Of a DNA stretch of 64,000 nt, positions 2,493 through 51,824 are shown piece by piece. The translations under genes were made by a program, and so were the position numbers. Each line of letters opens with the position of its first letter. Positions within the stretch are counted from its first letter, which is position 1. Under the pieces are notes generated by a model. That model saw only the letters and a program-made list of their open reading frames with translations, was not told where the DNA came from and made no database searches. The DNA lies in the IMG/VR virus record IMGVR_UViG_3300018891_000001, positions 124,001 through 188,000 of that record. One strand, given 5' to 3'.

Positions 2493-3587
2493 TTGCCCAT
2501 GTCGGAGATCAACTTTCAAGCTATTTTTCATCAAATGGAACAACAAATCCAAAAGGATGAATCCATTTTTACAACAGATTCTATTAATCCATATCATGTA
2601 AAGTTGCTTGATCCACAGCGTTTATATAATCGTCCTTTAAATCCTATTGAAGCAAAAATGATTCAAAACGTGGCAAGCATTGACCAATATTCTTGGAATC
2701 GTGATGCCCGAGGTGGTTTGACAACGGGGTTTCCACTCTTTGATGAAGCATTAGATGGTGGAGTTCAGCCAGGATTGTTTCTGTTTGCTTCTCAACCCAA
2801 TGTAGGTAAATCAGCCTTATTATTGCAACTTGCCCAACAGATTTCCGATTTAAATGAAAATGTGCATGTTGCCTACCATTCTCTTGATGATAGTGCAAAT
2901 GAACTCGCTCCACGCTATATTGCTTGCAAGCAACAAATTACGATTTCTCAAGCTAAAAATCCTGCTAAATATGCTGATCAGCCAGAGATTTTAGAAAAGC
3001 GAAATCAGGGAATTAAGCATTTATACCGAAATGCTCACAGGTTTTCTTTATGGGATTCCAATGATGGAACCAGTGTGGAAGTCATTGAAAACCGTATCAA
3101 AGAAATGAAAATGCATTTCCCGGAAGACACAAAACTAGTCATTATGATTGATAGTATCTACGACCTTACTGTAGATTCCAAACAACTTCAAGAGAAAGCC
3201 TTATATGAGCATGTCGCAAAAGTCGTTAAAAATTGGTGTGTAGCCTATGATGTCCCTGTTCTTTGTACGGCCCATTTGCGCAAATTAAATGGAGGCCGTC
3301 GCCCAATGACAGACGACTTAAAAGAAAATAACCGACTGGAATATGAAGCTAACTTTATTGCTCTTCTTTACAATGAAGTCGGGATTAAAGAAGAAGGGGC
3401 ACAAATCTATTGGATTAGCGAGGAGAAAGAACAAAAAATGCCTGTTATCGAGATGAAGGTAGGTAAAAATAAATTTGGCAGCTTCAAGGGGACTCGTTTC
3501 TACGAATTTATTCCGGATATGTCTTATCTAATGGAAGCACCTATTGAAGATTGCCGCAGATATGCTTCATTGATTTATCAAAGCTAA
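2493..3587 (+). CDS. dnaB: DnaB-like replicative helicase
   Basis: LTTGFPLFDEALDGG, Walker A ASQPNVGKS, VIMIDSI, DDLKENNRLEYEANFIALL, KVGKNKFG. Confidence 0.85.
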   Translation: MPMSEINFQAIFHQMEQQIQKDESIFTTDSINPYHVKLLDPQRLYNRPLNPIEAKMIQNVASIDQYSWNRDARGGLTTGFPLFDEALDGGVQPGLFLFASQPNVGKSALLLQLAQQISDLNENVHVAYHSLDDSANELAPRYIACKQQITISQAKNPAKYADQPEILEKRNQGIKHLYRNAHRFSLWDSNDGTSVEVIENRIKEMKMHFPEDTKLVIMIDSIYDLTVDSKQLQEKALYEHVAKVVKNWCVAYDVPVLCTAHLRKLNGGRRPMTDDLKENNRLEYEANFIALLYNEVGIKEEGAQIYWISEEKEQKMPVIEMKVGKNKFGSFKGTRFYEFIPDMSYLMEAPIEDCRRYASLIYQS

Positions 3588-3608
3588 TTCAAGGGGGAGA
3601 GTATAAAG

Positions 3609-3902
3609 ATGGAGAAAAGCATGCTAAAAACAATTAAACATGTGAAAGGCAGAGTAGAAGCTATTTTGCGTGAGTATCCCGAAACTCGAAATTGTGACAA
3701 ATTGCTTTGTATCACTTATTGGAAGTTAATTGATGAAGTGAAAGATTTAGATGGAATTCAATTCGCTACATGTCCAGAAGCCATTCGACGAGCCCGACAA
3801 TGGCTTAATGAAAGAGGACAGTATTTGGCGACAGATCCAGAAGTGCTGAAAAAAAGACGATACAATGCCAGAGAAATGAGGATTGGAGTTGCAAAGATAT
3901 AA
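3609..3902 (+). CDS. Hypothetical phage protein
   Basis: RBS ggggag; ILREYPETRNCDKLL...EAIRRARQ. Confidence 0.7.
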   Translation: MEKSMLKTIKHVKGRVEAILREYPETRNCDKLLCITYWKLIDEVKDLDGIQFATCPEAIRRARQWLNERGQYLATDPEVLKKRRYNAREMRIGVAKI

Positions 3903-4429: not shown

Positions 4430-5434
4430 TTGTTATTCTCCTATTATTTTGATACCAAAAAGACTCACTTGTTAAATTGTCATTTTAAAATCCTGCAATT
4501 TATTGAAAAAGCAAATGGAATTATTGAAATTATGTTTTCCGCAGAAATTGCTGAGTGGCAGAATGGTGCCGTTAAAAAGAAAGAAACAAAGGTGGCCACA
4601 TTCACCTTCCCACCTGCACAACAAGGACAAACCAAACACGATATTGATTTTATCCGGCTTCGCTACGGAGATCAGAAGAAATGGATTTTTACAGTAATCA
4701 ATAATAAAAACAGTAATCAAAAAGTAGAAGTCGGATTGATTTCTGATACAGCCAATAAAAATCCATTAGGACTGGATGTGTATCATGATGATGAAGGGTT
4801 TGAAATGGAGTTAAAAGCTAATACACTATCCATTTTAGAACCAACTTATCAACCTCCAATCCTAACACAGACACTAGTAAATACAAAATTTGAACAAGCT
4901 GGGTATCCAGAGCGATTTGGATCTTATACTGCTATATATGATTCTACTTATCAAAATTACCGACTCAGTGATTTTATCCAGTATTTTTCAGAACCTATTC
5001 CACCGGAAGCGGCATTTAAAATCCAAATGGATATCGCACCAACAGAAGTGCAAACCGTTTCAGGCATTGAAATATTCCGTGTTATCGTTCCCCAGTTAGG
5101 CCGGGTCAGCCTATTAAAAAATGGATTTGAATTTCAAATTCATAACGGATTAACCTCCGATATTGTTCGAGCTCTATTGAATAAAGAGGTTGCGCCTATG
5201 GATTTTTGGAATCACGGAATGACTAGTAAAGCAAAATTATCCATTGAGGGGGACGGAAAAGGTAAGTTGTTTATCCGTTATTATGACACCACATTGGAGG
5301 CTACCTATGATCCTACTTGCTCATTCGTGGAATTAGAATTCCGTGGTGTACAAGCAAAAGACGGGGATGCTAATGATCCTAACAATTGGGTATTCTCCCG
5401 GGTTGACAATATTAGTGTTATTTATCAAAAATAA
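4430..5434 (+). CDS. Hypothetical protein (beta-rich)
   Basis: 334-aa ORF with RBS; no recognised motif. Confidence 0.7.
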   Translation: MLFSYYFDTKKTHLLNCHFKILQFIEKANGIIEIMFSAEIAEWQNGAVKKKETKVATFTFPPAQQGQTKHDIDFIRLRYGDQKKWIFTVINNKNSNQKVEVGLISDTANKNPLGLDVYHDDEGFEMELKANTLSILEPTYQPPILTQTLVNTKFEQAGYPERFGSYTAIYDSTYQNYRLSDFIQYFSEPIPPEAAFKIQMDIAPTEVQTVSGIEIFRVIVPQLGRVSLLKNGFEFQIHNGLTSDIVRALLNKEVAPMDFWNHGMTSKAKLSIEGDGKGKLFIRYYDTTLEATYDPTCSFVELEFRGVQAKDGDANDPNNWVFSRVDNISVIYQK

Positions 5435-5437
5435 TAG

Positions 5438-5464
5438 TATAATAAGCATATTGAAATGTATTAC
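5438..5464 (+). promoter_or_regulatory. -10 box TATAAT plus operator-like GAAATGTATTAC
   Basis: TATAAT 5438-5443; motif variant 5453-5464. Confidence 0.6.
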
Positions 5465-5483
5465 AAGATTAGGAGGAATTGAG

Positions 5484-5882
5484 ATGTTAATAGGGCCAAG
5501 TATTACACTCGAAAAACTAGAAGAACATATGAAAAATCGTGTATATGAAATTAAAATGGATCTACCTAAGCTAGAAAAGGAATTTCGACGTTTAGGTGAA
5601 GAATTTAAAATGATTCCACGTACTATCATCAATGAAGAAGGAGAAGAAATTACCAACCCTGATTTTATTGCTATTCCCAAACGCATGAGAGAGATTGAGG
5701 AAGCTATTCAAGAATTACAAGATCAGCAAGAATTTATGGAAGCCAAGCTGATGGAGTTAGAAGATATTGAGGAACGCTCTAAAGGACGAGGTAATGTTAT
5801 CAAATCTAGAGATAAAATTATACTAAGTCTTAATGACTGCATTAAGCTAGGAATTACCTTGAATGAAGAAACCAAAGCATAA
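5484..5882 (+). CDS. Hypothetical coiled-coil protein
   Basis: RBS aggagg before ATG 5484. Confidence 0.7.
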   Translation: MLIGPSITLEKLEEHMKNRVYEIKMDLPKLEKEFRRLGEEFKMIPRTIINEEGEEITNPDFIAIPKRMREIEEAIQELQDQQEFMEAKLMELEDIEERSKGRGNVIKSRDKIILSLNDCIKLGITLNEETKA

Positions 5883-16934: not shown

Positions 16935-17849
16935 GTGGGAGTATTAACAAATTTAGTGAATCATCACTATCGTGAACAATACAAAAAACAAACTCGTCCG
17001 ATGCGAAAATTGCATCCTTCGACCATTGGCATGTGTCAGCGAAAAATTGTTTTTGATATGCTGATGGTTCCTAAAAACATGCCAGAAGATCGGGCATTGC
17101 GTATTTTTGAAAACGGACACAGTATGCATCACCGCTATGAGACTTTATTTTCAGATATGGGAATTTTAGTGCAAAGAGAAATGAAGTTGGAATTTGAAGA
17201 TATTAGCGGTCATACAGATGCTTGGATTCGCATTTACAGTATTGAAAATCCAGTAGGAACAAACTATTTAATTGAATTAAAAAGTGCTTCCTCTAAAAGT
17301 TTTGAATGGATGGTAAAAAACAATACTCCTAAAAAAGAACATCGGGATCAGTTGATGTTCTATCTACATCTTGTTCAAAAGATGGGGCTACCCATCCAAA
17401 AAGGTATTATCTTTGTGGAAAACAAAGACACACAAGAAGTATGGGAGTATGAGTTGGAGTATGATCCAGCCTATGCAAAAACTTTAGAAGAGAAAGCCAA
17501 TTGGTGTATCGCATTGGCCAAAGAAAGAAAACTTCCACCTATCCCACCAAAACACACACCAAGTTATTATAAATGCGCTACCTGCGAGTACAATTTCTAC
17601 TGTCATGCAGGAACCCTCAATAAAGATGGGTATGAGCGTTATCCAATCCCATTCAAATTTGGCAGTAAGGCATACGCAGATGTATTTAGTATTATTGCAG
17701 CAATGCAACATGAACAACCGATCCCCAATGTCATTATCGGAGATACCAATGGGGCACTTGCTACAGAAGTGGAAATGTATAATAATATGCCACCAACTGC
17801 TCAACCAAATGAATTAATCAATCAGTATATTCAAAATCATACTCAATAA
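16935..17849 (+). CDS. Cas4-like PD-(D/E)XK exonuclease (no CRISPR context)
   Basis: PSTIGMCQRK, ISGHTDA, IELKS, QLMFY, CATCEYNFYC. Confidence 0.8.
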   Translation: MGVLTNLVNHHYREQYKKQTRPMRKLHPSTIGMCQRKIVFDMLMVPKNMPEDRALRIFENGHSMHHRYETLFSDMGILVQREMKLEFEDISGHTDAWIRIYSIENPVGTNYLIELKSASSKSFEWMVKNNTPKKEHRDQLMFYLHLVQKMGLPIQKGIIFVENKDTQEVWEYELEYDPAYAKTLEEKANWCIALAKERKLPPIPPKHTPSYYKCATCEYNFYCHAGTLNKDGYERYPIPFKFGSKAYADVFSIIAAMQHEQPIPNVIIGDTNGALATEVEMYNNMPPTAQPNELINQYIQNHTQ

Positions 17850-17852
17850 AGG

Positions 17853-18179
17853 ATGGGATTTTATATGTACAATACTCAATTTGTGGATATCGGATTTTCT
17901 AATTATGTGGAAGTAAGCAAAATTTTGACAGTGAATCGTCCGGATTCTTCTCCAATCAAAAGAGTTATTCAACACGCAAAAGAAACAGGAAACTTTCTTG
18001 ATTTAACACAAGGAAAAAAGACAAGAAGTATTATTACACAAAAAGGGGAAAATGGCATTGTCGTCACTGCTTCCGCCGTACAAACAACTACCATTATTGA
18101 TCGTATTCGTCGCTCGCAGCAAGCTAAAGAAGTAGTCGAAAAAGTATCCGACGAAATCGTAGAAACTACAGTCGAATAA
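17853..18179 (+). CDS. remA: RemA/DUF370-family protein
   Basis: FVDIGFSNYV...RPDSSPIKRVIQHAKETG.FLDLTQGKKTRSII. Confidence 0.85.
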   Translation: MGFYMYNTQFVDIGFSNYVEVSKILTVNRPDSSPIKRVIQHAKETGNFLDLTQGKKTRSIITQKGENGIVVTASAVQTTTIIDRIRRSQQAKEVVEKVSDEIVETTVE

Positions 18180-18199: not shown

Positions 18200-19690
18200 A
18201 TGTGCCAAGGCATACACGTTCATGTACATAGTGAAGAAAGTTTGCTTGACGGATTATCAACTGTCAAACAGCTTGTTGCTAAAGCCAAAGCACTTGGACA
18301 TATTGCTTTAGGGCTTACCGATCATGGTGTGTGTGGAGCTATACCGGATTTTATTTCTGAGTGTCAGAAACAGGGTATTAAACCTATTCCGGGATGCGAG
18401 GTATACATGACCAAAAATCGTTTAATCAAAGGAAAAGAACTAGAAGAAATGCGTATCAAACTTTGCACCAAATACAAAATTACAGATCATAAAGGCAAGC
18501 CTAAGATGAAATTACTCCAAGATTTTCTTCGAAAAGTAGAAAAGAATTATGCTTGCTTTGAAGAAGAGGCTCGCATCCTATTAAAAGACTATCTCATGTC
18601 AAGTGACCCTGAACCCAAGGAGGAGTCACTTGATTTATTTTCCATCTATGAAATAGATTTTAATGAACCTCTAGAAGCGAAAAAAGCTCCCGATACTGTT
18701 GAAGAAAAAATAGAAGCTTTTAAAAAAGAAGTGTTTCACTACCTTGACTATGGTAATTTTCACATGGTGTTACTTGCCATGAATAATCAAGGACTGGAGG
18801 ATTTATATGAGATTGTTTCTGATGCTCATATTAATGGCTTCTATTCTGATCCTCGTACCGACCTTGATTTTATTCGAGAAAGAGGTCTGGGCAGGAATCT
18901 TATTGCTACTTCAGCCTGTCTTGGGAGTTATTTTAGTCAGCTCTGTTTGGCAGGAAGAATTGAAGAAGCGAAACAACATATTTTAGAATGCAAAGAAACC
19001 TTTGCACATTTTTATTTAGAAAAACAGGCTACCTCTATCCCCGAACAACTTTATATTAACCAAATCATTGATCAATTAGCCGTTGAAACCAATACACCGA
19101 AAATTCTCACCACAGACGTACACTATGCCAATAAAGAAGACAATCACATTCATGATATCCTTGTTACATCTTCTATTGGTAAGTGTATCTCTGATGAAAA
19201 CCGTATGAAATACGCCCATGAATTCTGGATGAAAAATGACGAAGAAATGATGGAAAAATGTTACGATCCAGAAGCATGGGGGAATACACTAAAAATTGCT
19301 GAAATGGTCAATGTTTCCTTACCGAAGGAGCCATTATTTCCAAAATTCTTGATTGAAGGAAATGAAACGGCTGATGAACTATTGAGAAAGAAAGCATGGA
19401 ACGGTTTATTCGAAATGGCATTAACCGAAGATATTGATATTCAAGAATACTCTCGAAGACTCCAATATGAACTGGATGTTATTTGTACAGAAGGATTTTC
19501 AGATTATTTCTTGATTACCGAAGATAAAATGAGAGCCACAAATGAAGCCGGCTTTTTAACAGGTCCGGGGCGTGGTTCGGGTGCAGGCTCACTCGTATGT
19601 CGATGCCTCAAAATTACTGCACTGGATCCGATTAAAGAAAACCTACTATTTGAGCGTTTCCTAAATCCAGAACGTGCTGGATATCCTGAT
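18200..19690 (+). CDS. dnaE: DNA polymerase III alpha, exon 1 (PHP domain and start of polymerase domain)
   Basis: HVHSEESLLDG, TDHG, SACLGS, GPGRGSGAGSLV, FERFLNPERAGYPD; the join 18200-19690 + 21004-21683 + 23092-24451 is 3531 nt and in frame. Confidence 0.9.
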
Positions 19691-21003
19691 TGGCTAACAA
19701 AATTTGTAGCGTAATGCATTTCATTTTCCTATCAATAATGATACAATAGATATAGATTATTGATAGGAGGAAGCAATAATGGGGAAACTTTATACGTATG
19801 ATATTATCTGTGAAACATGTGGAGAAACTGTAACTGTTACACGTTCAAGAAAAAATTCGAGATATTGCTCTAAATCGTGTGCATCCAAAGCGCCTCGAAA
19901 ATACAAAAACATCAACGAACAAGAAATTATTGATATGTATCAAAACGGATTATCCTTACAAAAGATTGAACAACAAACAAGCATCAAGATAGAGAAAATA
20001 AGAAAGATCATTCATCAAATAGGAATTATGAGAAGCAATAAAGAAAACTCTCGCAAATATCATATTAATCATGATTATTTTGAAACGATTGATACTGAAC
20101 ACAAAGCATATTGGCTTGGATTTATATATGCTGATGGATATATTGCAAAAAGAAAGGGTAATCAAAAATGCATCGGTATTGCATTATCAAGAAAAGATGA
20201 AGATCATATAAAAAATTTCTTGTTCGACGTTGATTCTAATTATGTAATTAGACAGTATACAGGAACAACTCCAGATGGAAAAGATTTTGAATATTCAAGA
20301 GTGATTATTACATCTGATAAAATGTTCGATGATTTATTGAATAAAGGAGTTGTCGAACACAAAACATTGGTTCTTCAATTTCCTTCATTCGAAATTGTCC
20401 CAAAAACTTTAATGCATCATTTTATCAGAGGATACTTTGATGGTGATGGATCATTCTCAAAATGCATAGAAGGATATACTCTTCCATATAAAGTGAGAAT
20501 CTGTGGAACAAAAGAGTTTCTTCAAGGCATTGAGAATTTTATTGGAATCAAAGGGAATTACAGTAAACGTCATAAAGATGATAAGAATAATTGGACATTA
20601 GAATACTCCAATAAAGAAGATATCCTTCAATTTGCTAATACCATTTACGAATATTGCACAATCTGCTTAAACAGAAAATATCAACGCTACAAAGAAATGT
20701 TGGATCAGTCGTCCTAATAAGAAACTATTAGGATTATCACTCGGTGAATTGCTGGAAACTCCTTAGAGCCTTATACACCACAACGTAGTTGGAAACGACA
20801 AGCGTGATGGTTTGAAAAGTATAAGGATTGGACAATCAGCAGCCAAGCTCCTAAGTCACAAGATATGGAGAAGGTTCAACGACCATCCCGTGGGAGGGAG
20901 TAGGGCAAATGCCCGAAGTGCCGAGCACCCAAACCGTTAAGGTCGGTGGGTGAAGATATGGTCTATTCCCTATACAAATATGTCGAAAGACAGGGTATCA
21001 AAG
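19691..21003 (+). mobile_element. Group I intron 1 in dnaE, HEG in P1 loop
   Basis: Core motifs gaattgctggaaac, aatcagcagccaag, gttcaacgacca, aagatatggtcta; ends in G; removal restores PD|LDIDY; the U.G register at the 5' site is not clean, so the boundary may be off by 1. Confidence 0.85.
19779..20717 (+). CDS. Intron-encoded LAGLIDADG homing endonuclease with N-terminal Zn finger and HTH
   Basis: YWLGFIYADG and FIRGYFDGDG; CETCG...YCSKSC. Confidence 0.9.
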   Translation: MGKLYTYDIICETCGETVTVTRSRKNSRYCSKSCASKAPRKYKNINEQEIIDMYQNGLSLQKIEQQTSIKIEKIRKIIHQIGIMRSNKENSRKYHINHDYFETIDTEHKAYWLGFIYADGYIAKRKGNQKCIGIALSRKDEDHIKNFLFDVDSNYVIRQYTGTTPDGKDFEYSRVIITSDKMFDDLLNKGVVEHKTLVLQFPSFEIVPKTLMHHFIRGYFDGDGSFSKCIEGYTLPYKVRICGTKEFLQGIENFIGIKGNYSKRHKDDKNNWTLEYSNKEDILQFANTIYEYCTICLNRKYQRYKEMLDQSS

Positions 21004-21683
21004 CTCGATATTGATTACTCATATGATGGAGCACGATGGGTACAAATGTACTTAAAAGAAAAATACGGGCATGATAAAGTTGCACAAATTGGAACCAAAG
21101 GAACGTTAGCAGCAAGAGCCGTCATCCGTCGTGTCGGAAAAACATTAGGATTAGAAAACGCCACAGTGGATGCTTTTGCAAAATCGATTCCTTCCCGTCC
21201 TGGTATTACATTAAATGAGGCTTATGCTGAAGAACCAATGGTACAGCAATATGCACAAACTTATCCGCAGTGGTGGGAAGCGGCAAAAGCATTAGAAGGT
21301 CATATTAGTCAAGTCGGAGTTCATGCCGGAGGAATTGTCTTATCTCCTGTTCCTCTCACCAAAGTCACTCCACTTCGCTTGGATAGTGAAGGACTTGAAA
21401 CAACCCAATATGATATGAAGTGGATTGAAAAATTCCTCGTCAAATTTGATATTTTAAAACTCGATACGCTGGACTTGATTAAAAAGACGATGGAGTTTGC
21501 AGGTATTTGGGGAACGATGGATCCGTATCGAGATATTGATGTTAATGATCCAAACATCTATAAAAATGTGTATAATCAACTCAATTTATCTGGTATCTTC
21601 CAGTGTGAATCCGATCTGTTTCGAAAAATTATTAATGATATGAAACCCAACTCTTTTGCTGATATTTCGGTTATTGTTGCCCT
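21004..21683 (+). CDS. dnaE: DNA polymerase III alpha, exon 2
   Basis: LDIDYS, VAQIGT, GVHAGGIVLS, LVKFDILKL, GIFQCES. Confidence 0.9.
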
Positions 21684-23091
21684 TAACTAATCCGGTCAAT
21701 CGGGGGCAACATTAAAAAAGCGGGTTATATGCTGGAACACCCTAAAGCCTACGGTACGCATAGCGTAACAATCCGTATGGATGTAACAATGGGCAACCAG
21801 CAGGGAAGGGTAGCTCGAAACCCACCCTCAGAGACTGGGAGAATATCTCCGCTTATGGAAGGTAACGACCATAAGCAACCCCGCTAGGATTGCTGTGAAG
21901 CAAACCGAATGATACAGTCCGACCTCTAGTGAAAGCTAGAGAGCTAGGCAGAAATGACCTAGCCATTATGACAAACAGGTTGACAACATATGAATTAATT
22001 CAAGGCGCTTATAAGGAGTCCAATATGGAATAGCAAGGTATTTGTAACCATGTTGCAGCAACAATTCCTTTTTAATCTGATCACGTTGTTGAATTTTTAA
22101 CAAGTCATCTTCACCGTTAGGATGATATTTCTCATACAAGTGGTAATGTTGCTCACCATGGTATTCAACACAAAGCTTATATTCTTCATAAAAAGCATCC
22201 ACATAAAGATGTTTACCAGTTGCAGAATTAATCAAGAAATCAAAAGTCTTTTCAGTAACCATTGGTGTATCTAAAATAGATGAAATCATTTTAAAGTAAT
22301 ATTGAGCAGTTCGATTTTCCTTTGTATAGTTTGCAGGAACACCGGCAAGCTCACACGCTTTGACAAATCCGAATCGGCGTTTATAAGTTTCACTAGAAAA
22401 CTTCGATTCAGCATCCACTAATGATTGAGATACAAAACCAAAATCGTTGTAAAGATTTCTTAATTCTTGCAGCAATTCCTCATCTGGTATGTTTTGTGGA
22501 TTTGCAATTGAACAACCTGCTTTTTCAAAAGCATTGTTCCATGATTTGAATAAACGATAAATAACATTTTGCGAATATTTACCTTGCTTTAAATAAAGCT
22601 CCTTAGTAATGCGACCATTAGTTTGAAAGACTGATTGAATATCAGCAATTACTTCATCTTCTGTGTAAATCGTTTTTTTACAAGCACTTGCAGGATTTTG
22701 TTGATCACTAATTGGAACACCGGCTTCACTATAAGCTAAATACACAGAAGCAAATTCTCTTTTAAAAGTATCGTATTTCCATTTTCCATAAGTATTAATA
22801 ATAGCTTGAGTGACCTTGCCATGTTCCTTATATAATCGTTGAATTTCAGTAATCAATGATTCACGAGTAGGTTTAATATCTTCTCCTGTAAGAGCTTTAG
22901 TAAAATGAGAAATGCCACCAAACTTTTTAAGTTGATAATACGTGTAACGAGAATGATTCATATAAATCTGTTTGGTGACTTTCCCGTATTCTTTGTAAAG
23001 TCTTTCAAAATCATTTAATAATTGCTCATATGTTACGTCCATATATAATTCCTCCTTAAAAGAACCTGTTTGTTATATTGTAACATAAAAG
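21684..23091 (+). mobile_element. Group I intron 2 in dnaE, with antisense HEG
   Basis: P1 gttgccct/ggggcaac with U.G; P10 atcg/cggt; tatatgctggaac, aaccagcagg, ctcagagact, aatgatacagtcc; terminal G 23091; removal restores AL|GRPGP. Confidence 0.9.
21966..23042 (-). CDS. Putative homing endonuclease: helical repeats plus Vsr/DUF559-like PD-(D/E)XK domain, antisense to its intron
   Basis: Repeated E....I..L....GK.T....Y units; LYVDAFYEEYKLCVEYHGEQHY...RDQIKKE; RBS aaggagg. Confidence 0.75.
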   Translation of the reverse strand: MDVTYEQLLNDFERLYKEYGKVTKQIYMNHSRYTYYQLKKFGGISHFTKALTGEDIKPTRESLITEIQRLYKEHGKVTQAIINTYGKWKYDTFKREFASVYLAYSEAGVPISDQQNPASACKKTIYTEDEVIADIQSVFQTNGRITKELYLKQGKYSQNVIYRLFKSWNNAFEKAGCSIANPQNIPDEELLQELRNLYNDFGFVSQSLVDAESKFSSETYKRRFGFVKACELAGVPANYTKENRTAQYYFKMISSILDTPMVTEKTFDFLINSATGKHLYVDAFYEEYKLCVEYHGEQHYHLYEKYHPNGEDDLLKIQQRDQIKKELLLQHGYKYLAIPYWTPYKRLELIHMLSTCLS

Positions 23092-24451
23092 CGGTAGACC
23101 AGGACCTTTAGATCTAATTCCTACATATGTTGCTCGCAAATGGGGAAGAGAAAAAGTCACTTATCCATTTCTAGAGTTAGCACCAGTACTTGAAGAAACA
23201 TATGGAGTTTGGGTATATCAGGAGCAGCTTATGAGAGCTTCACAGATTTTAGGTGGACTGACACTAGGACAAGCTGACATGATTCGTAAGGGAGTTGCTA
23301 AGAAAAAATTTGATTTAATGAACCGATGGATTGATCTCATGATTTACGGCAGCGAGGAGTATAAACGTCGTCATGCTCAATTAGTCAATCAATATCCGTT
23401 AGATGCGGAAGGAAAATCCACCGTACCACTTAACGAAGAAGGAAAACCTGCCTTATGGGTCGATTATGAGTACGAGCAAGTTCCTGATGTAGAAGGGGCC
23501 ATTGCTCGTGGATTTGATGAACCAACCTTGCTCAAAATTAAAGCCGACTGGATTAAGTTCGGTAATTACTGTTTCAATAAAGCCCACTCAGCGGCATATG
23601 CCTTTTTATCATGCATTACCGCATGGTTAAAATGCTACTATCCTGTTGAATTTATGGCTGCTTTATTAACCATGGCAGAAGGAAAGAAAGATAAAAACGG
23701 AAATCCAAAAACCATTCACTACATGAAAGAATGTGAAGAAATGGGAATCCGTATTTTGTCTCCTGATATTAATCAATCCATGTCTGGCTGGACTCCAATT
23801 TCCTATAATGAGATCCAATACGATAATCAGAATCGACCATGTATCGGTGAAATTCGCTATGGTCTAGCAAGTATTGGCGGTGTAAGTGAAGAATCTGTTG
23901 TAGAAATTATTTTGCGTCGTTCGTATTCTTCCTTAGAAGATTTTATTGCCAAAGTCAACAGCACAAAAGTGAATAAAACCAAAGTAATAGCCTTAATTAA
24001 AGCGGGTTGTTTTGATTCCTTCACTCCTAATCGTAATCTTCTTCTTCGTAACTATTATCGATCCCGTGGTGAAGAGTATGAGCATATCCCAACAACTACA
24101 AACAAAGCTACTATTCTTTCTTACGAGCGAGAAGTTTTCGGGACAGCCATTAGTATTCGTTCTCGATGGGAAAAAATCGAAGAAGGAGCTCAAACTCAAC
24201 TCACCGGTCATATTAATGAAATCGAATCCTGGAGAGCGAAAACAGGAAAAACCCATTTTACATTGGTGGTTGAAACACAGGAAGAACCAATCTTCGTTAC
24301 GGTATGGGGTTATTTAATGGAAAAATATAAAAATGAACTTCAAATTGGAAACAAAGTCACCATTAAAGGGGAAAAATCGAAAAACAAGCTGATTGCAAAA
24401 ACCGTCCAACAACACGCCAATATGTATGAAGTAGATTTGCCTTCAGCATAG
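23092..24451 (+). CDS. dnaE: DNA polymerase III alpha, exon 3
   Basis: GRPGP, YGVWVYQEQLM, YCFNKAHSAAY, YYPVEFMAALL, OB fold at the C-terminus. Confidence 0.9.
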
Positions 24452-24577
24452 GGAATGGATGCCGTCACTAAAAGAGGACGGTATCTGCACCTGTCTCCTT
24501 TACCTAAGCTCGTCTATTACTACTATATGTACCTCCCAAGACAAGTAGTACAAAAAAGAAAAAAACAGGAGGTCAAA

Positions 24578-24910
24578 ATGGAGCTCGTTCAACAATACTT
24601 ACGGATGCACTGGGCCTATTATTTTTGGATAGCCGACCAAGAACATACCATTTGGTATATTGTTCATCAAGGGATTACATTAGAACCTTGTCCTATTTAT
24701 CTTAATACTTATAATGCTTCGATTCGAATGTTGAAGGAGCATTATGAAGAAATCACAGAACAAGCATATGGATGGCAAAATCGATACCCTAAAATTGTTC
24801 GTATGAATCAATTAAAAGAAGTGGAGGCCTTTGAAATGATTTGGAAAGGTGTCTCTTATGAAGATGATATCGTTATTATTCACTGTAAGGCGAAATGGAT
24901 GACGGAGTGA
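24578..24910 (+). CDS. Hypothetical protein (MELVQQYL...)
   Basis: RBS aggaggt before ATG 24578. Confidence 0.7.
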   Translation: MELVQQYLRMHWAYYFWIADQEHTIWYIVHQGITLEPCPIYLNTYNASIRMLKEHYEEITEQAYGWQNRYPKIVRMNQLKEVEAFEMIWKGVSYEDDIVIIHCKAKWMTE

Positions 24911-24919
24911 AAAAGTTAT

Positions 24920-25033
24920 ATGGATTTAGTAAAAATGTATTTAGAACAAACCGATAAAGAACAAAAATATAACCCATTAGGAAACCAACAAGGAATACTA
25001 TCTTTTCAGGATACGCACGTTTTATTCCATTGA
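24920..25033 (+). CDS. Short ORF (MDLVKMYL..., 37 aa; possibly frameshifted)
   Basis: RBS ggagtg; not in ORF track. Confidence 0.45.
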   Translation: MDLVKMYLEQTDKEQKYNPLGNQQGILSFQDTHVLFH

Positions 25034-25117
25034 AATTCAGATGCACCATATACCAATGAGGAAAGAAGCATAGTAAACGTCATTTTTCGTTTAAAAGATG
25101 GATTTTTCATCTAACCA

Positions 25118-25141
25118 TGTTATAATATGTAATGCATTACA
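25118..25141 (+). promoter_or_regulatory. Extended -10 promoter with operator-like palindrome
   Basis: TG-T-TATAAT 25118-25126; TGTAATGCATTACA 25128-25141. Confidence 0.7.
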
Positions 25142-25163
25142 AGAAACAGAAAGAGGGAATATT

Positions 25164-25679
25164 ATGGAGCTGACAATAGAATATCTAAAATATTATATCA
25201 AAGTGAATCAAGCCTTAAAAAATCAAAATCAATTATTTGTAAAGCTAATGAATACAGATGATCCTATTTTTATTCCATCAAAAAAATATCCAAGCGATGC
25301 CGGATATGATTGTCGGGCTCGAATTGAAGAATCCATTACTTTGCAACCGGGAGAACGAGTTCGTATTCCACTTGGATTTGCTATAAATATTCCATTACAC
25401 TATACAGGCGATTTACGTCCACGAAGCGGATTAACCTGGAATCACGGTATTATGGTAGGATATGGTACAATTGATCCGGGTTATACAGGAGAAGTGATGG
25501 CTACGATTTTTAATTTCAGCCAAGAACCTTTTACCATTCAACCAAAAGACCGTATTGCTCAATTAGTTATTTTGCCAACAATCCATAGCAATGATGAATT
25601 CATTACATTACAACCAGTCAATGAATTAGTAGAACTAGACCGTGGAGACAAAGGACACGGAAGCACAGGAATCCAATAA
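25164..25679 (+). CDS. dut: Trimeric dUTPase
   Basis: DAGYD, RPRSG, GTIDPGYTGE, RIAQL, RGDKGHGSTG. Confidence 0.92.
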   Translation: MELTIEYLKYYIKVNQALKNQNQLFVKLMNTDDPIFIPSKKYPSDAGYDCRARIEESITLQPGERVRIPLGFAINIPLHYTGDLRPRSGLTWNHGIMVGYGTIDPGYTGEVMATIFNFSQEPFTIQPKDRIAQLVILPTIHSNDEFITLQPVNELVELDRGDKGHGSTGIQ

Positions 25680-25797
25680 GAAAGAAGTGAGCATCATGAG
25701 TTTTGCGGATTGGATCATAACTATTCTATGGTCTATATGTTTCATAAGAATCTGTATATACATTCAAAATCAAAAAACACCAAAGGAGTGAAAGAAT

Positions 25798-26877
25798 ATG
25801 GGTTTTCAAATGAAATACCAAATTCAAAAACAATATCTTACTGCACCAAGTAAACGTCGCCCGGGAGTAGCAGTACCAGAAGTTCGATTTATTGTTGCGC
25901 ACGACACCGGAAATCCGGGATCAACAGCAAAAGGAAATATTGGCTATTATGAACGCACTCACAACAGCATAAGTGCATCCGCTCATATCTTTGTTGATGA
26001 CAAAGAAATTATCGAATGTATTCCTTTCCTTACGGGGAAACCGGAGAAGGCATGGCATGTGCTCTATAATGTAACAACCGATAATCAAATGTATGGAGAA
26101 GATGCCAATGATGTAGCACTAGGTGTAGAGCTTTGTTGGGGTCCTGGCATTAACTCTGAGGAAGCTTATAAACGTTACATCTGGGTATTAGCCTATGCTT
26201 GTTATAAGTTTCAATTAGATCCAACAAAAGCCATTGTTGGTCATGACGTACTGGATCCGGGTAGAAAGATTGACCCATCTAATGCACTAAAATATATGGG
26301 CAAAACGTATCAGCAATTCCTAAAAGATGTAGTAAATGAGTATAACCGTTGTGTTGAGAAAACAGTCATCCAACCAGCTAAACCCCTTCAGGAAGATACG
26401 TATACCATTCAACCCGGGGATACATTCTGGAATATTGCTCAACGCATGAAAGATATTACAGTACAAGATTTAATTCGATGGAATCCAACTATTGATCCGT
26501 CTAATTTACAAGTAGGACAAGTCATTTCCCTAAAGCCACCAAAAGAAAAAACGACGAAATCTACAACAAAAACGGATTCAAAAACCAATTCCAAGAAAAC
26601 AGAAACTAAGAAAAATGAAACAAAAAAGAAAATCACACTCCCAAATAAAACCTTAAAACGAGGAGATCGTGGTAACGATGTACTAGCTGTCCAAAAAGCA
26701 TTAGCTTCTCTTTCTTTCTATCCAGATAAAAATGCACCGAACTACGGGTGTGACGGCATATATGGTCCAAAAACAGAAAATGCTGTTTCCCGATTCCAAT
26801 CTGTATACGTTGGAGATGTAGACGGCATTTACGGACCAAAAACAAAAGCAGCTTTAGAGAAGTTGCTCAATAAATAA
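25798..26877 (+). CDS. Endolysin: Amidase_2 + LysM + PG-binding domain
   Basis: IVAHDTGN, SAHIFVD, IVGH...KIDP; YTIQPGDTFWNIA; DGIYGPKT twice. Confidence 0.9.
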   Translation: MGFQMKYQIQKQYLTAPSKRRPGVAVPEVRFIVAHDTGNPGSTAKGNIGYYERTHNSISASAHIFVDDKEIIECIPFLTGKPEKAWHVLYNVTTDNQMYGEDANDVALGVELCWGPGINSEEAYKRYIWVLAYACYKFQLDPTKAIVGHDVLDPGRKIDPSNALKYMGKTYQQFLKDVVNEYNRCVEKTVIQPAKPLQEDTYTIQPGDTFWNIAQRMKDITVQDLIRWNPTIDPSNLQVGQVISLKPPKEKTTKSTTKTDSKTNSKKTETKKNETKKKITLPNKTLKRGDRGNDVLAVQKALASLSFYPDKNAPNYGCDGIYGPKTENAVSRFQSVYVGDVDGIYGPKTKAALEKLLNK

Positions 26878-47311: not shown

Positions 47312-49753
47312 TTATAAAGCAAAGAGGTCTAGCTCCTGTTGCCCCTCAATAACTTGCTTCCGCTTTGGTACACCCTTATTGTATTCTCTAACGTTTTCTA
47401 CTTTCTTGATGACAGAATCAAACATGGATAAATAATCGTCAATGGCTTTACGAGTCCGACGAACATCTTCTTTTGTTGCACGACCGACCTTTGCTTCTTC
47501 TTCTACAAAGCGAATCAATCCTTGAGCAATCTTACGTACTGTATCAATACCGCCTTCAATTGGATTCATGATATAACCTTCATAATCCTGAAACTCCACA
47601 GCTTGCATTTCCTCAAAGGACTGATTTTTGCGGGCAAAGATATCATGTACCGTTTCAATATCTTCAAAGACATTATCATTAAGGAGCTGTTTGGCTAATG
47701 CATTCATGCCGTCAGAACTATCTGCCATGGCACGCAATCCTTCTTCAGAGAATTTTCCTTGCATAGCCATAGCTGCATCAATTTTGCGAGCAATATGTTT
47801 GAGAGCTTTCTCTTGAATCGTATCACGATACACATAGGTGTATACTTTTACATCTTTCGTTTGTTTGAGTCGCCATGAACGACGAGAGGCCTGCATGTAA
47901 TCATATGTGGAATAATCCAATTGGAAAAAGTGGATATTTGGAAAAGCAAGTAAATCTAATCCAACTTTCACCAATCGTGGATTGGTAATAAGAATGTCCC
48001 AATCGTGTTTCTCCATCATTCCATGAAGCCATTGTTCCCGTTGTTGAGAATTCTTTGGCATTCGAATCCCGTCATAGCTTCCACCATTTCGAAGAATTCC
48101 TACATTATAACCTCGACGTTTGAATTCTTCATACAAGTAAATATCCACTTGATTCCATGCTTCTTTTCCGGTGTATTTGACATAAATCAGATTCTTGCGA
48201 CCATGCTGATAAATTTCATCATCAATAATGCGGATCAATTGTTCTACTTTTCTTGGCACAAAATTTACTGGATCAAAAGTACGAGGAACTCCAAGAATAT
48301 GACGATGTCCATCTTTATCATATGTGACAATTTCTTCTACATTAAATGGTGTATCCGCATACTGATACATGGCATTGATAAAGGTAGAAATACTATTCAT
48401 GCCACCTAACCCTTCTGTTGAACGCATGGTTACGGCGACATCATGTGCAATTTGTCGATAAGCATCATGGTGTTCAGAACTCATATCTACCACTACCGGG
48501 ATTTCTCGATATGGCGGTAATGCATATCCCATGTCATTTAGTTCTAAGAAGGCACAATTATTCATCAGATGCATCGGGAATAAATGTGGTGAAATACCTG
48601 GTTTTTGTGAAGTCGTACGACGAATGCGACCATCTCGTGCACGAGTACTTCGCTCATTAATTCCATATCGACGATTAAAGAGTGATTCATCTTGATACGT
48701 AATGCCTTCCCGAAGAAGTCCTTTTGGATTTAAGCGAGCTAGTAAATAAAAAATATCTCGAGCCATTCCACCCATTAATGTCCCCGTTAGCAAAATTTGT
48801 TTTTCAGTATGGTTCACTAATTGGCCAAATGCAGTACCTGTTGTAGAATCTCCACTTTTGTACTCATGAACTTCATCAGCAATTAGGTATTTAAAGAATC
48901 CTCTTGGTAATTTCTTATTGATATACCAAGCTGGAGATACTTTTCGATATCCAGAATCCAGTGGAAGTTTTTCTGGCTGCCATAATACATATCCGCATTC
49001 TTGTTCCTCATCTGCCGGCACCCAACGATTACTATTGTAATCCAACTTCCATTCCTTAATTTCCTCTTTTGGTAAAAGAGAAGTTGGAACTTTGTTTCGG
49101 CAGCGATAATTTTCTTTGGTCATATTCTTTACCCAGTTCTTTGATGACTTGTTGTAAGTTTCAAAGAAATGTTCTTCTGCATATTCACCGCCACGTTCGA
49201 ATAATGGATTCCCACACTTTGGACAATAAAAACTGGTTTCGCCTACCGAATAAAACACATCAGGTCTTCCGCTCTCATAATTCCAGACTTCGTTTCGAAT
49301 CATGCGAACACGATACTCAGGATGAACAACTTGATGCATGCCATCTCCTCGTCGAACATGTCGAATTTGTTCAGGTTCTACGTCCTCTACAGAACGGAAT
49401 GTAATATCAGATTTATGAACACGCCAATCTTTGATAGGCTCCATCGGATAAGTAAACTTGGACAACTCAGAGCTCATGATGTAATATTCCCATTTCTCCG
49501 GTTTCTTGTATTTTATTTTTCCTTTTGCATCCATGTATTGGTTTTGTTCCTGGATTCGTTTTACGTCTAACCAATGTTGAATAATATGTGTTTCTACATT
49601 CGGTATTCGTTCTTTAATTTCCCGTGCCCATTTTTCTACCATAATGGAAGGACACAGGACAATAACCCGCTGTGGTTGAGGATTGGTTTCTACGTTTTGC
49701 AGCATTGCTTCTGTGATGTATGGAACTACTTCACCCATTGTGGTTTTACCTGT
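47312..49753 (-). CDS. SF2 (SNF2/DEAD-like) helicase, exon 2
   Basis: TGKT, IVLCP, LIADEVHEYK, LLTGT, GLDL, QASRRSWR. Confidence 0.85.
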   Translation of the reverse strand, partial: TGKTTMGEVVPYITEAMLQNVETNPQPQRVIVLCPSIMVEKWAREIKERIPNVETHIIQHWLDVKRIQEQNQYMDAKGKIKYKKPEKWEYYIMSSELSKFTYPMEPIKDWRVHKSDITFRSVEDVEPEQIRHVRRGDGMHQVVHPEYRVRMIRNEVWNYESGRPDVFYSVGETSFYCPKCGNPLFERGGEYAEEHFFETYNKSSKNWVKNMTKENYRCRNKVPTSLLPKEEIKEWKLDYNSNRWVPADEEQECGYVLWQPEKLPLDSGYRKVSPAWYINKKLPRGFFKYLIADEVHEYKSGDSTTGTAFGQLVNHTEKQILLTGTLMGGMARDIFYLLARLNPKGLLREGITYQDESLFNRRYGINERSTRARDGRIRRTTSQKPGISPHLFPMHLMNNCAFLELNDMGYALPPYREIPVVVDMSSEHHDAYRQIAHDVAVTMRSTEGLGGMNSISTFINAMYQYADTPFNVEEIVTYDKDGHRHILGVPRTFDPVNFVPRKVEQLIRIIDDEIYQHGRKNLIYVKYTGKEAWNQVDIYLYEEFKRRGYNVGILRNGGSYDGIRMPKNSQQREQWLHGMMEKHDWDILITNPRLVKVGLDLLAFPNIHFFQLDYSTYDYMQASRRSWRLKQTKDVKVYTYVYRDTIQEKALKHIARKIDAAMAMQGKFSEEGLRAMADSSDGMNALAKQLLNDNVFEDIETVHDIFARKNQSFEEMQAVEFQDYEGYIMNPIEGGIDTVRKIAQGLIRFVEEEAKVGRATKEDVRRTRKAIDDYLSMFDSVIKKVENVREYNKGVPKRKQVIEGQQELDLFAL

Positions 49754-50849: not shown

Positions 50850-51824
50850 ACCCATTTCTCCAACGATAAAACAAAAATCATCTTCCACCAATGTTTTAGA
50901 AACACCCATAACAGTATTGGCTTGCGGTGGATATAGACCTGTAATTCCTTGCTGATTGGCACATAAATTCACATCACGAAAAGCGGGATGATGTCGTTCT
51001 TTCTCCGGATCAAAACGAACAGCAATATTCTCTTGGATACGTTTTCCTAGCTCTGGTGCAAAGTGAGTTAAATAATCATCAATCGTCTGACAATGAGGTA
51101 ATATGGATTGACTTTCATCTCGGCCATCTTCTTCAATTGCAAAGTTTAACTCATATCCTTGAACTCCTTCTGAGATAATGTTTTCTAGCTGTTCTTCTGT
51201 AATCATAAGAAGTCCTGCTTCTAGAGAATAATTGGAACCAAAACACTTCACGGTAAGAGGTGTATAATAACCTTCCTCTTCTAGTCGTTCGACAATATAA
51301 TCAGTCCATTCCTCTAGCATTGGTGTATTATATCGGTCATTCAGAACATGAAACACTTGTTTTTTGTAATTACCATCCCATGCCAAAATGAGTTCAGCTA
51401 AATGGCTTGGAATAGATTCTGGATCTAGACCTTGATTGATTCGTTCTCTTTGTTCTGCTAACCATTGATTACGTGCTTTTAAATCTGGTTTTGCATTTTT
51501 GGCCACCATCAAAATATGAGTTAAATCATCAACTTTTAATACCTCTTCATCATACGGCTTTTTAGACGTAGGAATAGCAAAAACACTATGACGAATAAAT
51601 CCTGTTTCGTATCGATTTCCTTCAGCACGATAAATTTGTCCCGTTTTTCCATCTTGCATAAGCCATGCGGCTTGCTTTACTTTGGAATCCACACCAATCA
51701 AATTGGCTAAATAGATGACATTATCGCTATCTGTCACAAGTAGATCACAATAGGCTATGCCGCTTGAAGAATGACGGTTATACATTTCTAATGTATATAT
51801 TTCCGGCATATAAAGGCGTGGCAT
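50850..51824 (-). CDS. SF2 helicase, exon 1
   Basis: RBS gaggtg; ends LYPPQANTV...CFIVGEMG. Confidence 0.85.

What the first reader, a model, noticed from the sequence alone, without database searches (positions are those of the whole stretch)
18200..24451. dnaE split by two group I introns at conserved motifs
Seen: removing 19691-21003 and 21684-23091 gives one in-frame 1176-aa DnaE with restored PD|LDIDY (catalytic Asp motif) and AL|GRPGP. Both introns have P/Q/R/S cores and end in G. Automated annotation would report three fragments. Established: phage group I introns favour conserved sites in DNA-metabolism genes. I am not aware of doubly interrupted family C polymerases being commonly reported.
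Basis: partly seen in the sequence, partly recalled or inferred. Interest (0 to 1): 0.6.

Follow-up and report, generated by a model that had tools for sequence, protein, structure and literature searches.

The report
Phage DnaE split by two introns
The only DNA polymerase gene of a 216-kb soil-crust phage is cut into three pieces by two self-splicing group I introns, and the second intron carries its homing-endonuclease gene backwards on the opposite strand, which is unusual for a phage intron.

Summary
Rfam finds group I cores in both gaps (86.3 and 51.5 bits). Pfam profile positions of the three exon translations abut exactly. Uninterrupted relatives read ...VIVALGRPGPLDLIP... across the second junction.

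The ambiguous U.G register of intron 1 is resolved. U19690 pairs with G20708, an internal guide that lies inside the last codons of the intron's LAGLIDADG gene. Four homologous same-site introns use the same guide.

Intron 2 has a 9-bp P1, an 8-of-9 P10, and a 15-bp stem that closes a 1.1-kb loop. That loop holds a 358-aa endonuclease gene on the minus strand. A second phage contig from another sample has the same antisense arrangement (dN/dS about 0.08). Related introns in two GenBank phages carry this endonuclease family in sense orientation, at a different DnaE site.

DnaE in this phage clade is an intron hot spot, with at least five insertion sites. Alicyclobacillus phage KKP_3916 already holds an unannotated DnaE with at least two introns.

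Group I introns in phage replication genes are a known kind. The family C host gene and the antisense endonuclease are the new parts. No RNA data exist, so splicing is inferred.

The parts
18200..19690 (+). dnaE exon 1 (497 codons: PHP domain and first part of the palm). Ends ...NPERAGYPD, with the first catalytic-motif Asp as its last codon.
   Evidence: Pfam PHP E 2.1e-37; DNA_pol3_alpha profile 2-103 of 260; sequence.
19691..21003 (+). Intron 1, group I, 1313 nt, phase 0, ends in G21003. The ORF sits in the P1 loop. P7.1/P7.2-like hairpins suggest subgroup IA.
   Evidence: RF00028 86.3 bits at 20689-20985. Same-site homologues in L002, L003, L005, L006, L007, L001 and L012. RNAalifold finds 36 of 63 pairs with compensatory changes.
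19687..19698 (+). P1 5' strand of intron 1: last 4 exon bases (UGAU) plus the first 8 intron bases. Pairs with 20699-20711. The splice-site pair is U19690.G20708.
   Evidence: Duplex -12.9 kcal/mol, also chosen in the mini-intron MFE fold. Same GUC(G/C) guide in 4 homologues, with -4 pairs U.G, U.G, G-C, C-G and one A/G mismatch.
19728..19767 (+). 12-bp hairpin that covers the first half of the Shine-Dalgarno sequence (AGGAGG, 19765-70) of the LAGLIDADG gene. Probably limits its translation.
   Evidence: MFE -18.2 kcal/mol, z -3.3 against shuffles. The regulatory role is inferred.
19779..20717 (+). Intron 1 homing endonuclease gene, 312 aa, double-motif LAGLIDADG, sense strand. Its last seven codons and stop codon (AUG UUG GAU CAG UCG UCC UAA) contain the internal guide sequence and the start of P2.
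   Evidence: PF14528 E 3.4e-10. phrog_4645 endonuclease E 1.9e-60, full length. Sequence.
20699..20732 (+). Internal guide sequence / P1 3' strand (20699-20711), followed by the P2 hairpin (20713-20732).
   Evidence: P2 pairs covary in L007, L005, L003 and L002.
21004..21683 (+). dnaE exon 2 (226 codons plus 2 bases of a Leu codon). Starts LDIDY and ends ...ISVIVA-L.
   Evidence: Pfam DNA_pol3_alpha 104-259 of 260 and fingers 20-72 of 166.
21684..23091 (+). Intron 2, group I, 1408 nt, phase 2, ends in G23091. Built as core P1-P9.1 (21684-21963), then a P9.2-like long stem with a 1.1-kb loop, then a short 3' tail.
   Evidence: RF00028 51.5 bits at 21674-21941. Mini-intron fold. Core is 95.4% identical to L012 while exons are 66-77% identical.
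21675..21711 (+). P1 of intron 2: exon UGUUGCCCU (21675-83) pairs with GGGGCAACA (21703-11), with U21683.G21703 at the splice site. GGUCAAUCG (21694-21702) pairs with the 3' exon CGGUAGACC (23092-23100) as P10, 8 of 9 pairs.
   Evidence: The outermost P1 pair is U-A here and C-G in L012.
21967..21981 (+). 5' arm of the 15-bp stem that closes the endonuclease-bearing loop. Pairs with 23063-23077.
   Evidence: Duplex -22.1 kcal/mol against shuffled mean -7.5. Stems in the same place with different sequences in L012, L003 and L004.
21966..23042 (-). Antisense homing-endonuclease gene, 358 aa: three homing-endonuclease-associated repeats plus a C-terminal nuclease-like domain. Strong Shine-Dalgarno (AAGGAGG) 8 nt before the ATG.
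   Evidence: PF18780 E 4.2e-28, 3 repeats. PHROG homing / intron-encoded nuclease families. Full-length alignment to the sense-strand homologues of KKP_3916 and TR-TP1. 80% identical antisense copy in L012 with dN 0.12, dS 1.43.
23063..23091 (+). 3' arm of the long stem (23063-77) and the 3' tail UUGUAACAUAAAAG, which ends in the terminal G. The tail motif GUAACA is shared by the related introns of L003, L004 and L012.
23077..23085 (-). Extended -10-like TGTTACAAT on the minus strand, 43 nt upstream of the antisense ATG. Candidate promoter of the antisense gene, not shown to work.
   Evidence: Pattern match, conserved in L012, which also has two TATAAT boxes. The general promoter scan lists nothing there.
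23092..24451 (+). dnaE exon 3 (last base of the Leu codon plus 452 codons and the stop): rest of the fingers, HhH, weak OB fold.
   Evidence: Pfam fingers 75-161 of 166, HHH_6 E 3.2e-20. There is no start codon between 23093 and 23231 although the conserved DnaE sequence begins at 23093.

Best explanation
The single dnaE gene of this jumbo phage is interrupted by two mobile, self-splicing group I introns at two highly conserved motifs: the catalytic PD|xDxD motif of the palm and the AL|GRPGP motif of the fingers.

The gene is transcribed as one pre-mRNA. Each ribozyme folds, an external guanosine attacks after the U of the U.G pair in P1, and the freed exon end attacks after the terminal G. 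The ligated mRNA encodes a 1176-residue DnaE.

Intron 1 spreads through a sense-strand LAGLIDADG endonuclease housed in the P1 loop. A hairpin over its ribosome-binding site probably damps its translation.

Intron 2 houses a self-contained endonuclease cassette, with its own ribosome-binding site and probably its own promoter, in the loop of a peripheral stem after P9.1. In this phage and in one relative the cassette points against dnaE. It must therefore be expressed from the opposite strand, independently of dnaE transcription.

Shown here: the ribozyme cores, the pairings, colinearity of the exons, conservation, and selection on the antisense ORF. Inferred: splicing itself, endonuclease activity and target, and the antisense promoter.
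For: - Ribozyme cores: RF00028 above the gathering score in both gaps.
- Exon continuity: Pfam profile coordinates abut (103/104 and 72/75).
- Junction 2: uninterrupted relatives L001, L002, L007, L008 and L009 read ...VALxRPGP... across it. L007 matches the predicted spliced sequence over the junction (ISVIVALGRPGPLDLIP).
- Intron 1: canonical U.G P1 chosen by MFE, shared by 4 homologues with covariation. P2-P9 have 36 of 63 pairs with compensatory changes.
- Intron 2: 9-bp P1, 8-of-9 P10 and a 15-bp long-range stem at -22 kcal/mol against -7.5 for shuffles. Stems of different sequence occur at the same place in three related introns.
- Constraint on the RNA: the intron 2 core is 95% identical between two phages whose exons are 66-77% identical.
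- No independent expression of pieces: exons 2 and 3 lack start codons at the points where conserved DnaE sequence begins.
- DnaE matters: no family A or B polymerase is found in the complete genome, so DnaE is the only recognisable phage polymerase.
- Antisense ORF: full length against its homologues, dN/dS about 0.08 against the L012 copy, same orientation in both phages.
- Not an assembly error: the same sequence is assembled without differences in contigs of four runs, though all from one study that may be the source.
Against: - No RNA evidence. All runs that hold the phage are DNA contigs.
- Intron 1 has no convincing P10 with the 3' exon (my inspection of 20695-20707 against 21004-21012).
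- Intron 2 scores only just above the Rfam gathering score.
- An antisense transcript across the intron could interfere with dnaE pre-mRNA.
- The generic promoter scan found no minus-strand promoter upstream of the antisense gene.
- The nuclease fold of the antisense protein could not be confirmed.
Confidence: 0.88

Rival explanations
1. The introns are dead relics. dnaE is a pseudogene or is made as three separate polypeptides, and the phage uses the host polymerase.
For: No RNA data. Genes-in-pieces created by endonuclease insertion are known in phages (discussed in PMC2677866).
Against: Exons 2 and 3 have no start codon or ribosome-binding site where conserved sequence begins. The break at PD|LDID would split the catalytic motif between polypeptides. 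The exons stay colinear and conserved across many relatives that share the site A intron. The ribozyme cores are more conserved than the exons and show compensatory changes.
Confidence: 0.05
2. The minus-strand ORF in intron 2 is a decaying passenger left by a recent inversion between the 15-bp stem arms. It is not expressed, and the intron is effectively immobile.
For: Homologous introns in KKP_3916 and TR-TP1 carry the same endonuclease family in sense orientation in the same loop. The loop is flanked by inverted repeats that could mediate inversion. No promoter passed the generic scan.
Against: The antisense arrangement is shared by two phages whose synonymous sites are saturated (dS 1.43), yet dN/dS is about 0.08 and both ORFs are intact at 358 aa. 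A strong Shine-Dalgarno and -10-like boxes precede the ATG in both.
Confidence: 0.15
3. The interruptions are inteins, or the pieces are joined by protein trans-splicing as in cyanobacterial split DnaE.
For: DnaE is a classic intein host (PMC4853749; PMC2677866).
Against: Both gaps hold in-frame stops directly after the exon ends. Pfam reports no intein or Hint-type family on any exon piece or on either intron ORF. Both gaps hold group I ribozyme cores.
Confidence: 0.01
4. The arrangement is an assembly chimera of a metagenome.
For: The record comes from a biocrust metagenome.
Against: Contigs of 65-76 kb in three runs cover the whole stretch with no differences. An independent sample (L012, ENA) has the same three-exon layout with the antisense gene.
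Confidence: 0.01

Closest known systems
Group I introns in DNA polymerase genes of Bacillus phages SPO1, SP82 and Bastille (I-HmuI, I-BasI) and of T7-like phages (cited in PMC3984707, PMC2504315, PMC3428280)
   Same: [quoted passage not shown]
   Different: Those polymerases are family A. They have one intron per gene, HNH nicking enzymes and a sense-strand ORF. Here the polymerase is family C (DnaE), there are two introns, the enzymes are LAGLIDADG and a repeat-plus-nuclease protein, and one is antisense.
Multiple introns in one phage gene: Staphylococcus phage Twort nrdE (two introns; Landthaler 2002, cited in PMC3984707)
   Same: More than one group I intron in a single DNA-metabolism gene of an intron-rich phage.
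   Different: A different host gene. No antisense ORF is described in what I read.
Alicyclobacillus phage KKP_3916 (OQ846916) and Thomasclavelia phage TR-TP1 (PQ571309) dnaE
   Same: Phage DnaE genes interrupted by group I introns. KKP_3916 has an intron at the same PD|xDxD site. Both phages have a relative of intron 2: same core, same 3' tail, and the same endonuclease family in the same stem loop.
   Different: Their intron 2 relative sits at another site (DFLG|L, about 75 codons upstream) and carries the endonuclease in sense orientation. The pieces are annotated as hypothetical proteins or as separate 'DNA polymerase' CDS. The KKP_3916 paper does not contain the word intron.
recA intron of Bacillus thuringiensis phage 0305phi8-36 with I-Bth0305I, EDxHD / Vsr-like family (PMC3239194, PMC2677866)
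   Same: A jumbo Firmicute phage. The intron endonuclease is built from N-terminal DNA-binding repeats plus a C-terminal restriction-endonuclease-like domain. The family is also found free-standing.
   Different: No significant sequence match to the solved I-Bth0305I domain. That ORF is sense and sits in another part of the intron (P5 in PMC3239194; the P1 loop in PMC2677866).
Nuclear rDNA group I introns with antisense homing endonuclease genes (L2066 introns, PMC9548176)
   Same: The homing endonuclease gene lies on the strand opposite to the ribozyme, inside a peripheral loop.
   Different: Those are eukaryotic nuclear rDNA introns with His-Cys box enzymes, Pol II-type expression and spliceosomal introns. 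Here the setting is a phage protein-coding gene with bacterial-type translation signals.

Membership tests
Group I intron (Rfam RF00028) | Conserved catalytic core (P3-P9 with the P, Q, R, S elements) recognised by the covariance model at or above the gathering score | tested here: met
   Intron 1 scores 86.3 bits and intron 2 scores 51.5 bits; gathering score 50.
Group I intron (Rfam RF00028) | 5' splice site after a U that forms a U.G wobble with the internal guide in P1 | tested here: met
   Intron 1: U19690.G20708. Intron 2: U21683.G21703 in a 9-bp P1.
Group I intron (Rfam RF00028) | Intron ends in G (omega G) immediately before the 3' exon | tested here: met
   G21003 and G23091.
Group I intron (Rfam RF00028) | P10 pairing between the guide region and the 3' exon (common, not universal) | tested here: inconclusive
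   Intron 2 has 8 of 9 pairs, -9.4 kcal/mol. I saw no convincing P10 for intron 1 by inspection.
Group I intron (Rfam RF00028) | Removal restores a continuous reading frame colinear with uninterrupted homologues | tested here: met
   Pfam positions 103/104 and 72/75. Uninterrupted relatives across site B.
Group I intron (Rfam RF00028) | Guanosine-dependent self-splicing | not testable with these tools
   No RNA run holds the phage.
DnaE, family C DNA polymerase alpha subunit | PHP, pol III alpha palm, fingers, HhH and OB domains in order | tested here: met
   PF02811, PF07733, PF17657 and PF14579 above cut-off. The OB domain is weak (E 0.0077).
DnaE, family C DNA polymerase alpha subunit | Catalytic aspartates of the palm (PDxDxD motif plus a third Asp) | tested here: inconclusive
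   PD|LDID is present across junction 1. The third Asp was not mapped.
LAGLIDADG homing endonuclease (intron 1 ORF) | LAGLIDADG-type domain, two motifs in one chain | tested here: met
   PF14528 E 3.4e-10. Motifs LGFIYADGY and IRGYFDGDGS are in the translation. phrog_4645 matches at full length.
EDxHD / Vsr-like homing endonucleases (I-Bth0305I) | C-terminal domain homologous to the Vsr nuclease, with the composite E, D, H, D residues | tested here: inconclusive
   No match to PDB chains by phmmer or by a 3-sequence profile. The single-sequence fold was unusable, pLDDT 39.9. Atlas leads point to DUF559 / DUF2726-type nucleases. D282, E286/E293, H299 and D321 are invariant in the 3-sequence alignment, but the mapping onto Vsr is by eye.
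EDxHD / Vsr-like homing endonucleases (I-Bth0305I) | N-terminal DNA-binding repeats | tested here: met
   Three PF18780 homing-endonuclease-associated repeats, E 4.2e-28. These are not the NUMOD 2 motifs that PMC3239194 describes for I-Bth0305I.

The most novel reading that the evidence does not exclude
Intron 2 is a phage group I intron whose homing endonuclease is a captured free-standing-type cassette. It has been kept for a long time in antisense orientation inside a peripheral stem loop. It is transcribed from its own minus-strand promoter, which overlaps the intron's conserved 3' tail, and it still acts as the intron's mobility enzyme.

The same intron-plus-endonuclease family occupies at least two, probably three, different sites of dnaE in different phages. 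The ribozyme and its endonuclease would therefore have moved together to new sites within one gene, with the cassette working in either orientation.
Probability: 0.4. Interest if true: 0.65.

Novelty: new variant of a known kind. Interest (0 to 1): 0.5.

Why it matters
- **Annotation.** Gene callers report this polymerase as fragments. The 236-aa piece P0001 is on record from this genome. In GenBank, phage KKP_3916 lists the pieces as hypothetical proteins and TR-TP1 lists two 'DNA polymerase' CDS. A phage's sole replicative polymerase can therefore be missed or miscounted.
- **Natural series for homing biology.** The DnaE clade offers a comparative series at one site: an intron with an intact endonuclease, one with a decayed endonuclease, and one with none. 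Related introns sit at several other sites. This is useful for studying the homing cycle and ectopic intron movement.
- **The antisense endonuclease.** It is under purifying selection, which raises a concrete question: how is an intron-borne homing gene expressed and timed when it is uncoupled from its host gene's transcript, and does convergent transcription affect splicing?
- **New enzymes.** Two new homing enzymes with long, conserved polymerase target sites are candidates for characterisation.

Tried and rejected
- **Alternative P1 for intron 1** (exon 19680-90 with 20727-38, giving a U-A pair at the splice site). Rejected. It is less stable (-11.0 against -12.9), and it uses the 3' strand of P2, which covaries as a hairpin in homologues.
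- **Rfam's own P1 assignment for intron 1** (20693-20715). Poorly paired and ignored.
- **Near-identical phage search and viral-contig scan.** No close relative found.
- **RNA evidence.** Only DNA contigs from one biocrust study. No joints at the intron borders and no intron-less allele.
- **Structure of the antisense protein.** Single-sequence AlphaFold2 gave pLDDT 39.9. It was unusable, so no fold search was run.
- **PDB sequence searches.** Negative with the protein and with a 3-sequence profile.
- **Psychrobacillus homologue P0013.** 46% identical, but free-standing with no intron nearby.
- **Listeria phage LPJP1 hit to the intron 1 core.** It lies in a structural-gene region, not in dnaE.
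- **Literature.** I found no report of a group I intron in a phage dnaE, or of an antisense endonuclease in a phage intron, in the held library. The 2014 review of bacterial group I introns contains none of the words antisense, opposite, orientation, dnaE or polymerase III. This is absence in a limited library, not proof.
- **Joined protein.** Exons were searched one by one by reference, and continuity was judged from profile coordinates and from natural uninterrupted homologues.
Full report
**Source.** The window is bases 124001-188000 of a 215,870-bp IMG/VR virus record with direct terminal repeats, rated complete. The same sequence is assembled in four runs of one biocrust metagenome study, which may be its source. 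It has no close relative among GenBank phages or in the viral contig collection.

**The observation.** On the + strand there are three open pieces: 18200-19690, 21004-21683 and 23092-24451.
- Their translations match Pfam domains in DnaE order. Piece 1 carries PHP and pol III alpha palm positions 2-103 of 260. Piece 2 carries palm 104-259 and fingers 20-72 of 166. Piece 3 carries fingers 75-161, HhH and a weak OB fold.
- The profile coordinates abut exactly. At the second junction the two missing positions are filled by the split Leu codon (CT at 21682-83 plus C at 23092) and the first Gly of piece 3.
- Both gaps start with in-frame stops.
Exons were searched separately by reference, and this step is left out.

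**The gaps are group I introns.** Rfam RF00028 matches 20689-20985 (86.3 bits, E 1.4e-20) and 21674-21941 (51.5 bits, E 3.7e-10), both above the gathering score of 50. Both 5' exons end in U, and both introns end in G, at 21003 and 23091.

**Intron 1 (19691-21003).**
The longest complement to the exon end (20727-38) would indeed put a U-A pair at the splice site.
- A second pairing gives a canonical U19690.G20708. It joins exon UGAU plus intron UGGCUAAC (19687-98) to GUUGG-A-UCAGUCG (20699-20711). It is more stable (-12.9 against -11.0 kcal/mol) and is the one chosen in the minimum-energy fold of a mini-intron.
- The rival site is the 3' strand of P2 (20713-32), which keeps pairing through compensatory changes in homologues.
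- Homologous introns sit at exactly the same dnaE site in seven other sequences: metagenomic contigs L001, L002, L005, L006, L007 and L012, and Alicyclobacillus phage KKP_3916 (L003).
- Five of the introns, counting this one, have their 5' exon on the contig. All five form the U.G pair with the same GUC(G/C) guide. The -4 pair reads U.G, U.G, G-C and C-G, with one mismatch.
- Across five of the introns, 36 of 63 predicted pairs show changes on both sides that keep the pair.
- The 312-aa LAGLIDADG gene (19779-20717) therefore sits in the P1 loop, and its last codons are the guide sequence.
- L012 has the same intron without any ORF (337 nt, with a neat P1 hairpin). L002 has a 537-nt version with only the tail of the ORF. 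These are the stages expected of a homing-endonuclease cycle.
- A 12-bp hairpin (19728-67, z -3.3) covers half of the ORF's Shine-Dalgarno sequence.
- I saw no convincing P10 for this intron.

**Intron 2 (21684-23091).**
- P1 is 9 bp (UGUUGCCCU with GGGGCAACA, U21683.G21703). The adjacent GGUCAAUCG pairs with the first nine bases of exon 3 at 8 of 9 positions, forming P10.
- After P9 (21924-41) and P9.1 (21943-63), a 15-bp stem joins 21967-81 to 23063-77. Its energy is -22.1 kcal/mol against -7.5 for shuffles. The stem is followed by the tail UUGUAACAUAAAAG.
- The 1.1-kb loop holds a 358-aa ORF on the minus strand (21966-23042), preceded by AAGGAGG. The + strand of the loop has no ORF above 50 aa.
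- The protein has three homing-endonuclease-associated repeats (PF18780, E 4e-28). Its C-terminal domain matches PHROG homing and intron-encoded nuclease families.
- Site B is uninterrupted in L001, L002, L003, L007, L008 and L009. L007 reads ISVIVALGRPGPLDLIP, which matches the predicted spliced product over that stretch.

**Relatives of intron 2.**
- KKP_3916 and Thomasclavelia phage TR-TP1 carry related introns: similar core, same GUAACA tail, and the same endonuclease family in a stem loop at the same place, with stems of different sequence.
- Those introns sit about 75 codons upstream, inside the DFLG|L motif, and their endonuclease is in sense orientation.
- Contig L012, from a different sample, has the window's arrangement: site B with the endonuclease antisense.
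- Between the window and L012 the endonuclease is 80% identical in protein, with dN 0.12 and dS 1.43, a ratio of about 0.08. The antisense gene has therefore been kept by selection for a long time.
- The ribozyme core is 95.4% identical between the two, while exons are 66-77% and the endonuclease DNA is 78%. This argues for constraint on the RNA.
- The outermost P1 pair changes from U-A to C-G.
- A 46% identical homologue in a Psychrobacillus genome is free-standing, with no intron nearby.
- Upstream of each endonuclease ATG there are -10-like boxes: TGTTACAAT in the window and L012, two further TATAAT in L012, and TGGTATAAT in KKP_3916. I read the cassette as self-sufficient and so usable in either orientation. 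This is inference, and the generic promoter scan listed nothing there.
- The flip could have come from inversion between the stem arms or from an independent insertion. I cannot tell which.

**Wider picture.**
- In this DnaE clade I counted insertions at five or more sites:
  - A: PD|xDxD.
  - B: AL|GRPGP.
  - C: about exon 3 codon 157-161, in L001, L007, L008 and L009.
  - D: DFLG|L.
  - E: exon 3 codon 41/42, in L012.
  - Probably one more in L005 and L006.
- The phage itself has seven RF00028 matches, four of them above the gathering score. They split the terminase large subunit, a large virion-type protein, an SNF2-related helicase and a UvrD helicase, as well as dnaE.
- No family A or B polymerase is detectable, so the split DnaE is the only recognisable polymerase.

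**Comparison with what is known.**
[quoted passage not shown] So are several introns in one gene (Twort nrdE, cited there).
- In the library available I found no report of a group I intron in a phage dnaE, or of an antisense endonuclease in a phage or bacterial group I intron.
- Antisense endonuclease genes are described for nuclear rDNA introns (PMC9548176).
- The KKP_3916 paper does not mention introns.
- The endonuclease resembles the I-Bth0305I (EDxHD) family in architecture, but membership could not be shown.

**Limits.** Splicing, endonuclease activity and the antisense promoter are all inferred, and no RNA data exist.

**Verdict.** The observation and the interpretation are both right. 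The main finding is a new host gene for a well-known kind of element. The antisense endonuclease under selection, and the multi-site intron family in DnaE, are the parts worth following up.

Noticed in passing
window 47312-51863 (-): A third group I intron (RF00028 97.5 bits at 49787-50082, minus strand) with a sense LAGLIDADG ORF (49967-50962) splits an SNF2-related helicase gene into 50847-51863 and 47312-49738.
   Followed up: partly
window 58270-60732 (-): A UvrD-type helicase is split at about 59380-59946 by an ORF-less insertion with a sub-threshold RF00028 match (37 bits at 59708-59959). Pfam UvrD-helicase ends at 246/271 in the upstream piece, and UvrD_C starts at 2/350 in the downstream piece.
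   Followed up: partly
G000:C1:27500-33500 (L010) and 62500-69500 (L011), outside the window: Further group I introns with LAGLIDADG ORFs interrupt the terminase large subunit and a large protein with no Pfam match, probably a virion protein. The genome has seven RF00028 matches, four of them above the gathering score.
   Followed up: partly
L012 (ENA ERZ27254879 k141_81455), reverse strand 3403-3707: The related phage has a further 305-nt ORF-less insertion at exon 3 codon 41/42. It ends in GGUAACAAAAUUG like the intron 2 family. Rfam did not detect it at E 0.01.
   Followed up: partly
L003 = Alicyclobacillus phage KKP_3916 OQ846916, 56427-64458: This published phage has a DnaE gene in at least four pieces, with two RF00028 cores (70.6 and 41.7 bits) and two intron ORFs. 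All are annotated as hypothetical proteins. A possible third gap lies at locus 5185-5600.
   Followed up: partly
window 21909-21964: The P9/P9.1 segment of intron 2 recurs at about 90% identity in other contigs of the same biocrust runs (18 kb and 46 kb, at other depths). It also recurs in Bacillus phage vB_BceM_WH1, under a gene annotated as a recombinase. This points to a widely shared intron module.
   Followed up: no
run X3, contig of 213,061 bases: A second jumbo-phage-sized contig in the same sample shares only short pieces of the exon 1 end (19655-19693) and of the LAGLIDADG ORF (20427-20455). It is probably a related phage that also has an intron at site A.
   Followed up: no
window 16935-18179 and 24455-26877: Gene neighbours of dnaE. 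Upstream are a 304-aa ORF with no family assigned (16935-17849) and a small ORF (17853-18179) in the position where L002 has a RemA-like gene. Downstream are an ORF that looks by eye like a dUTPase (25098-25679) and one that looks like an amidase-type endolysin with LysM-like and peptidoglycan-binding-like repeats (25798-26877), which would suggest a Gram-positive host. None of these four window ORFs was scanned against a family library; L001 has an Amidase_2 gene downstream of its dnaE.
   Followed up: no
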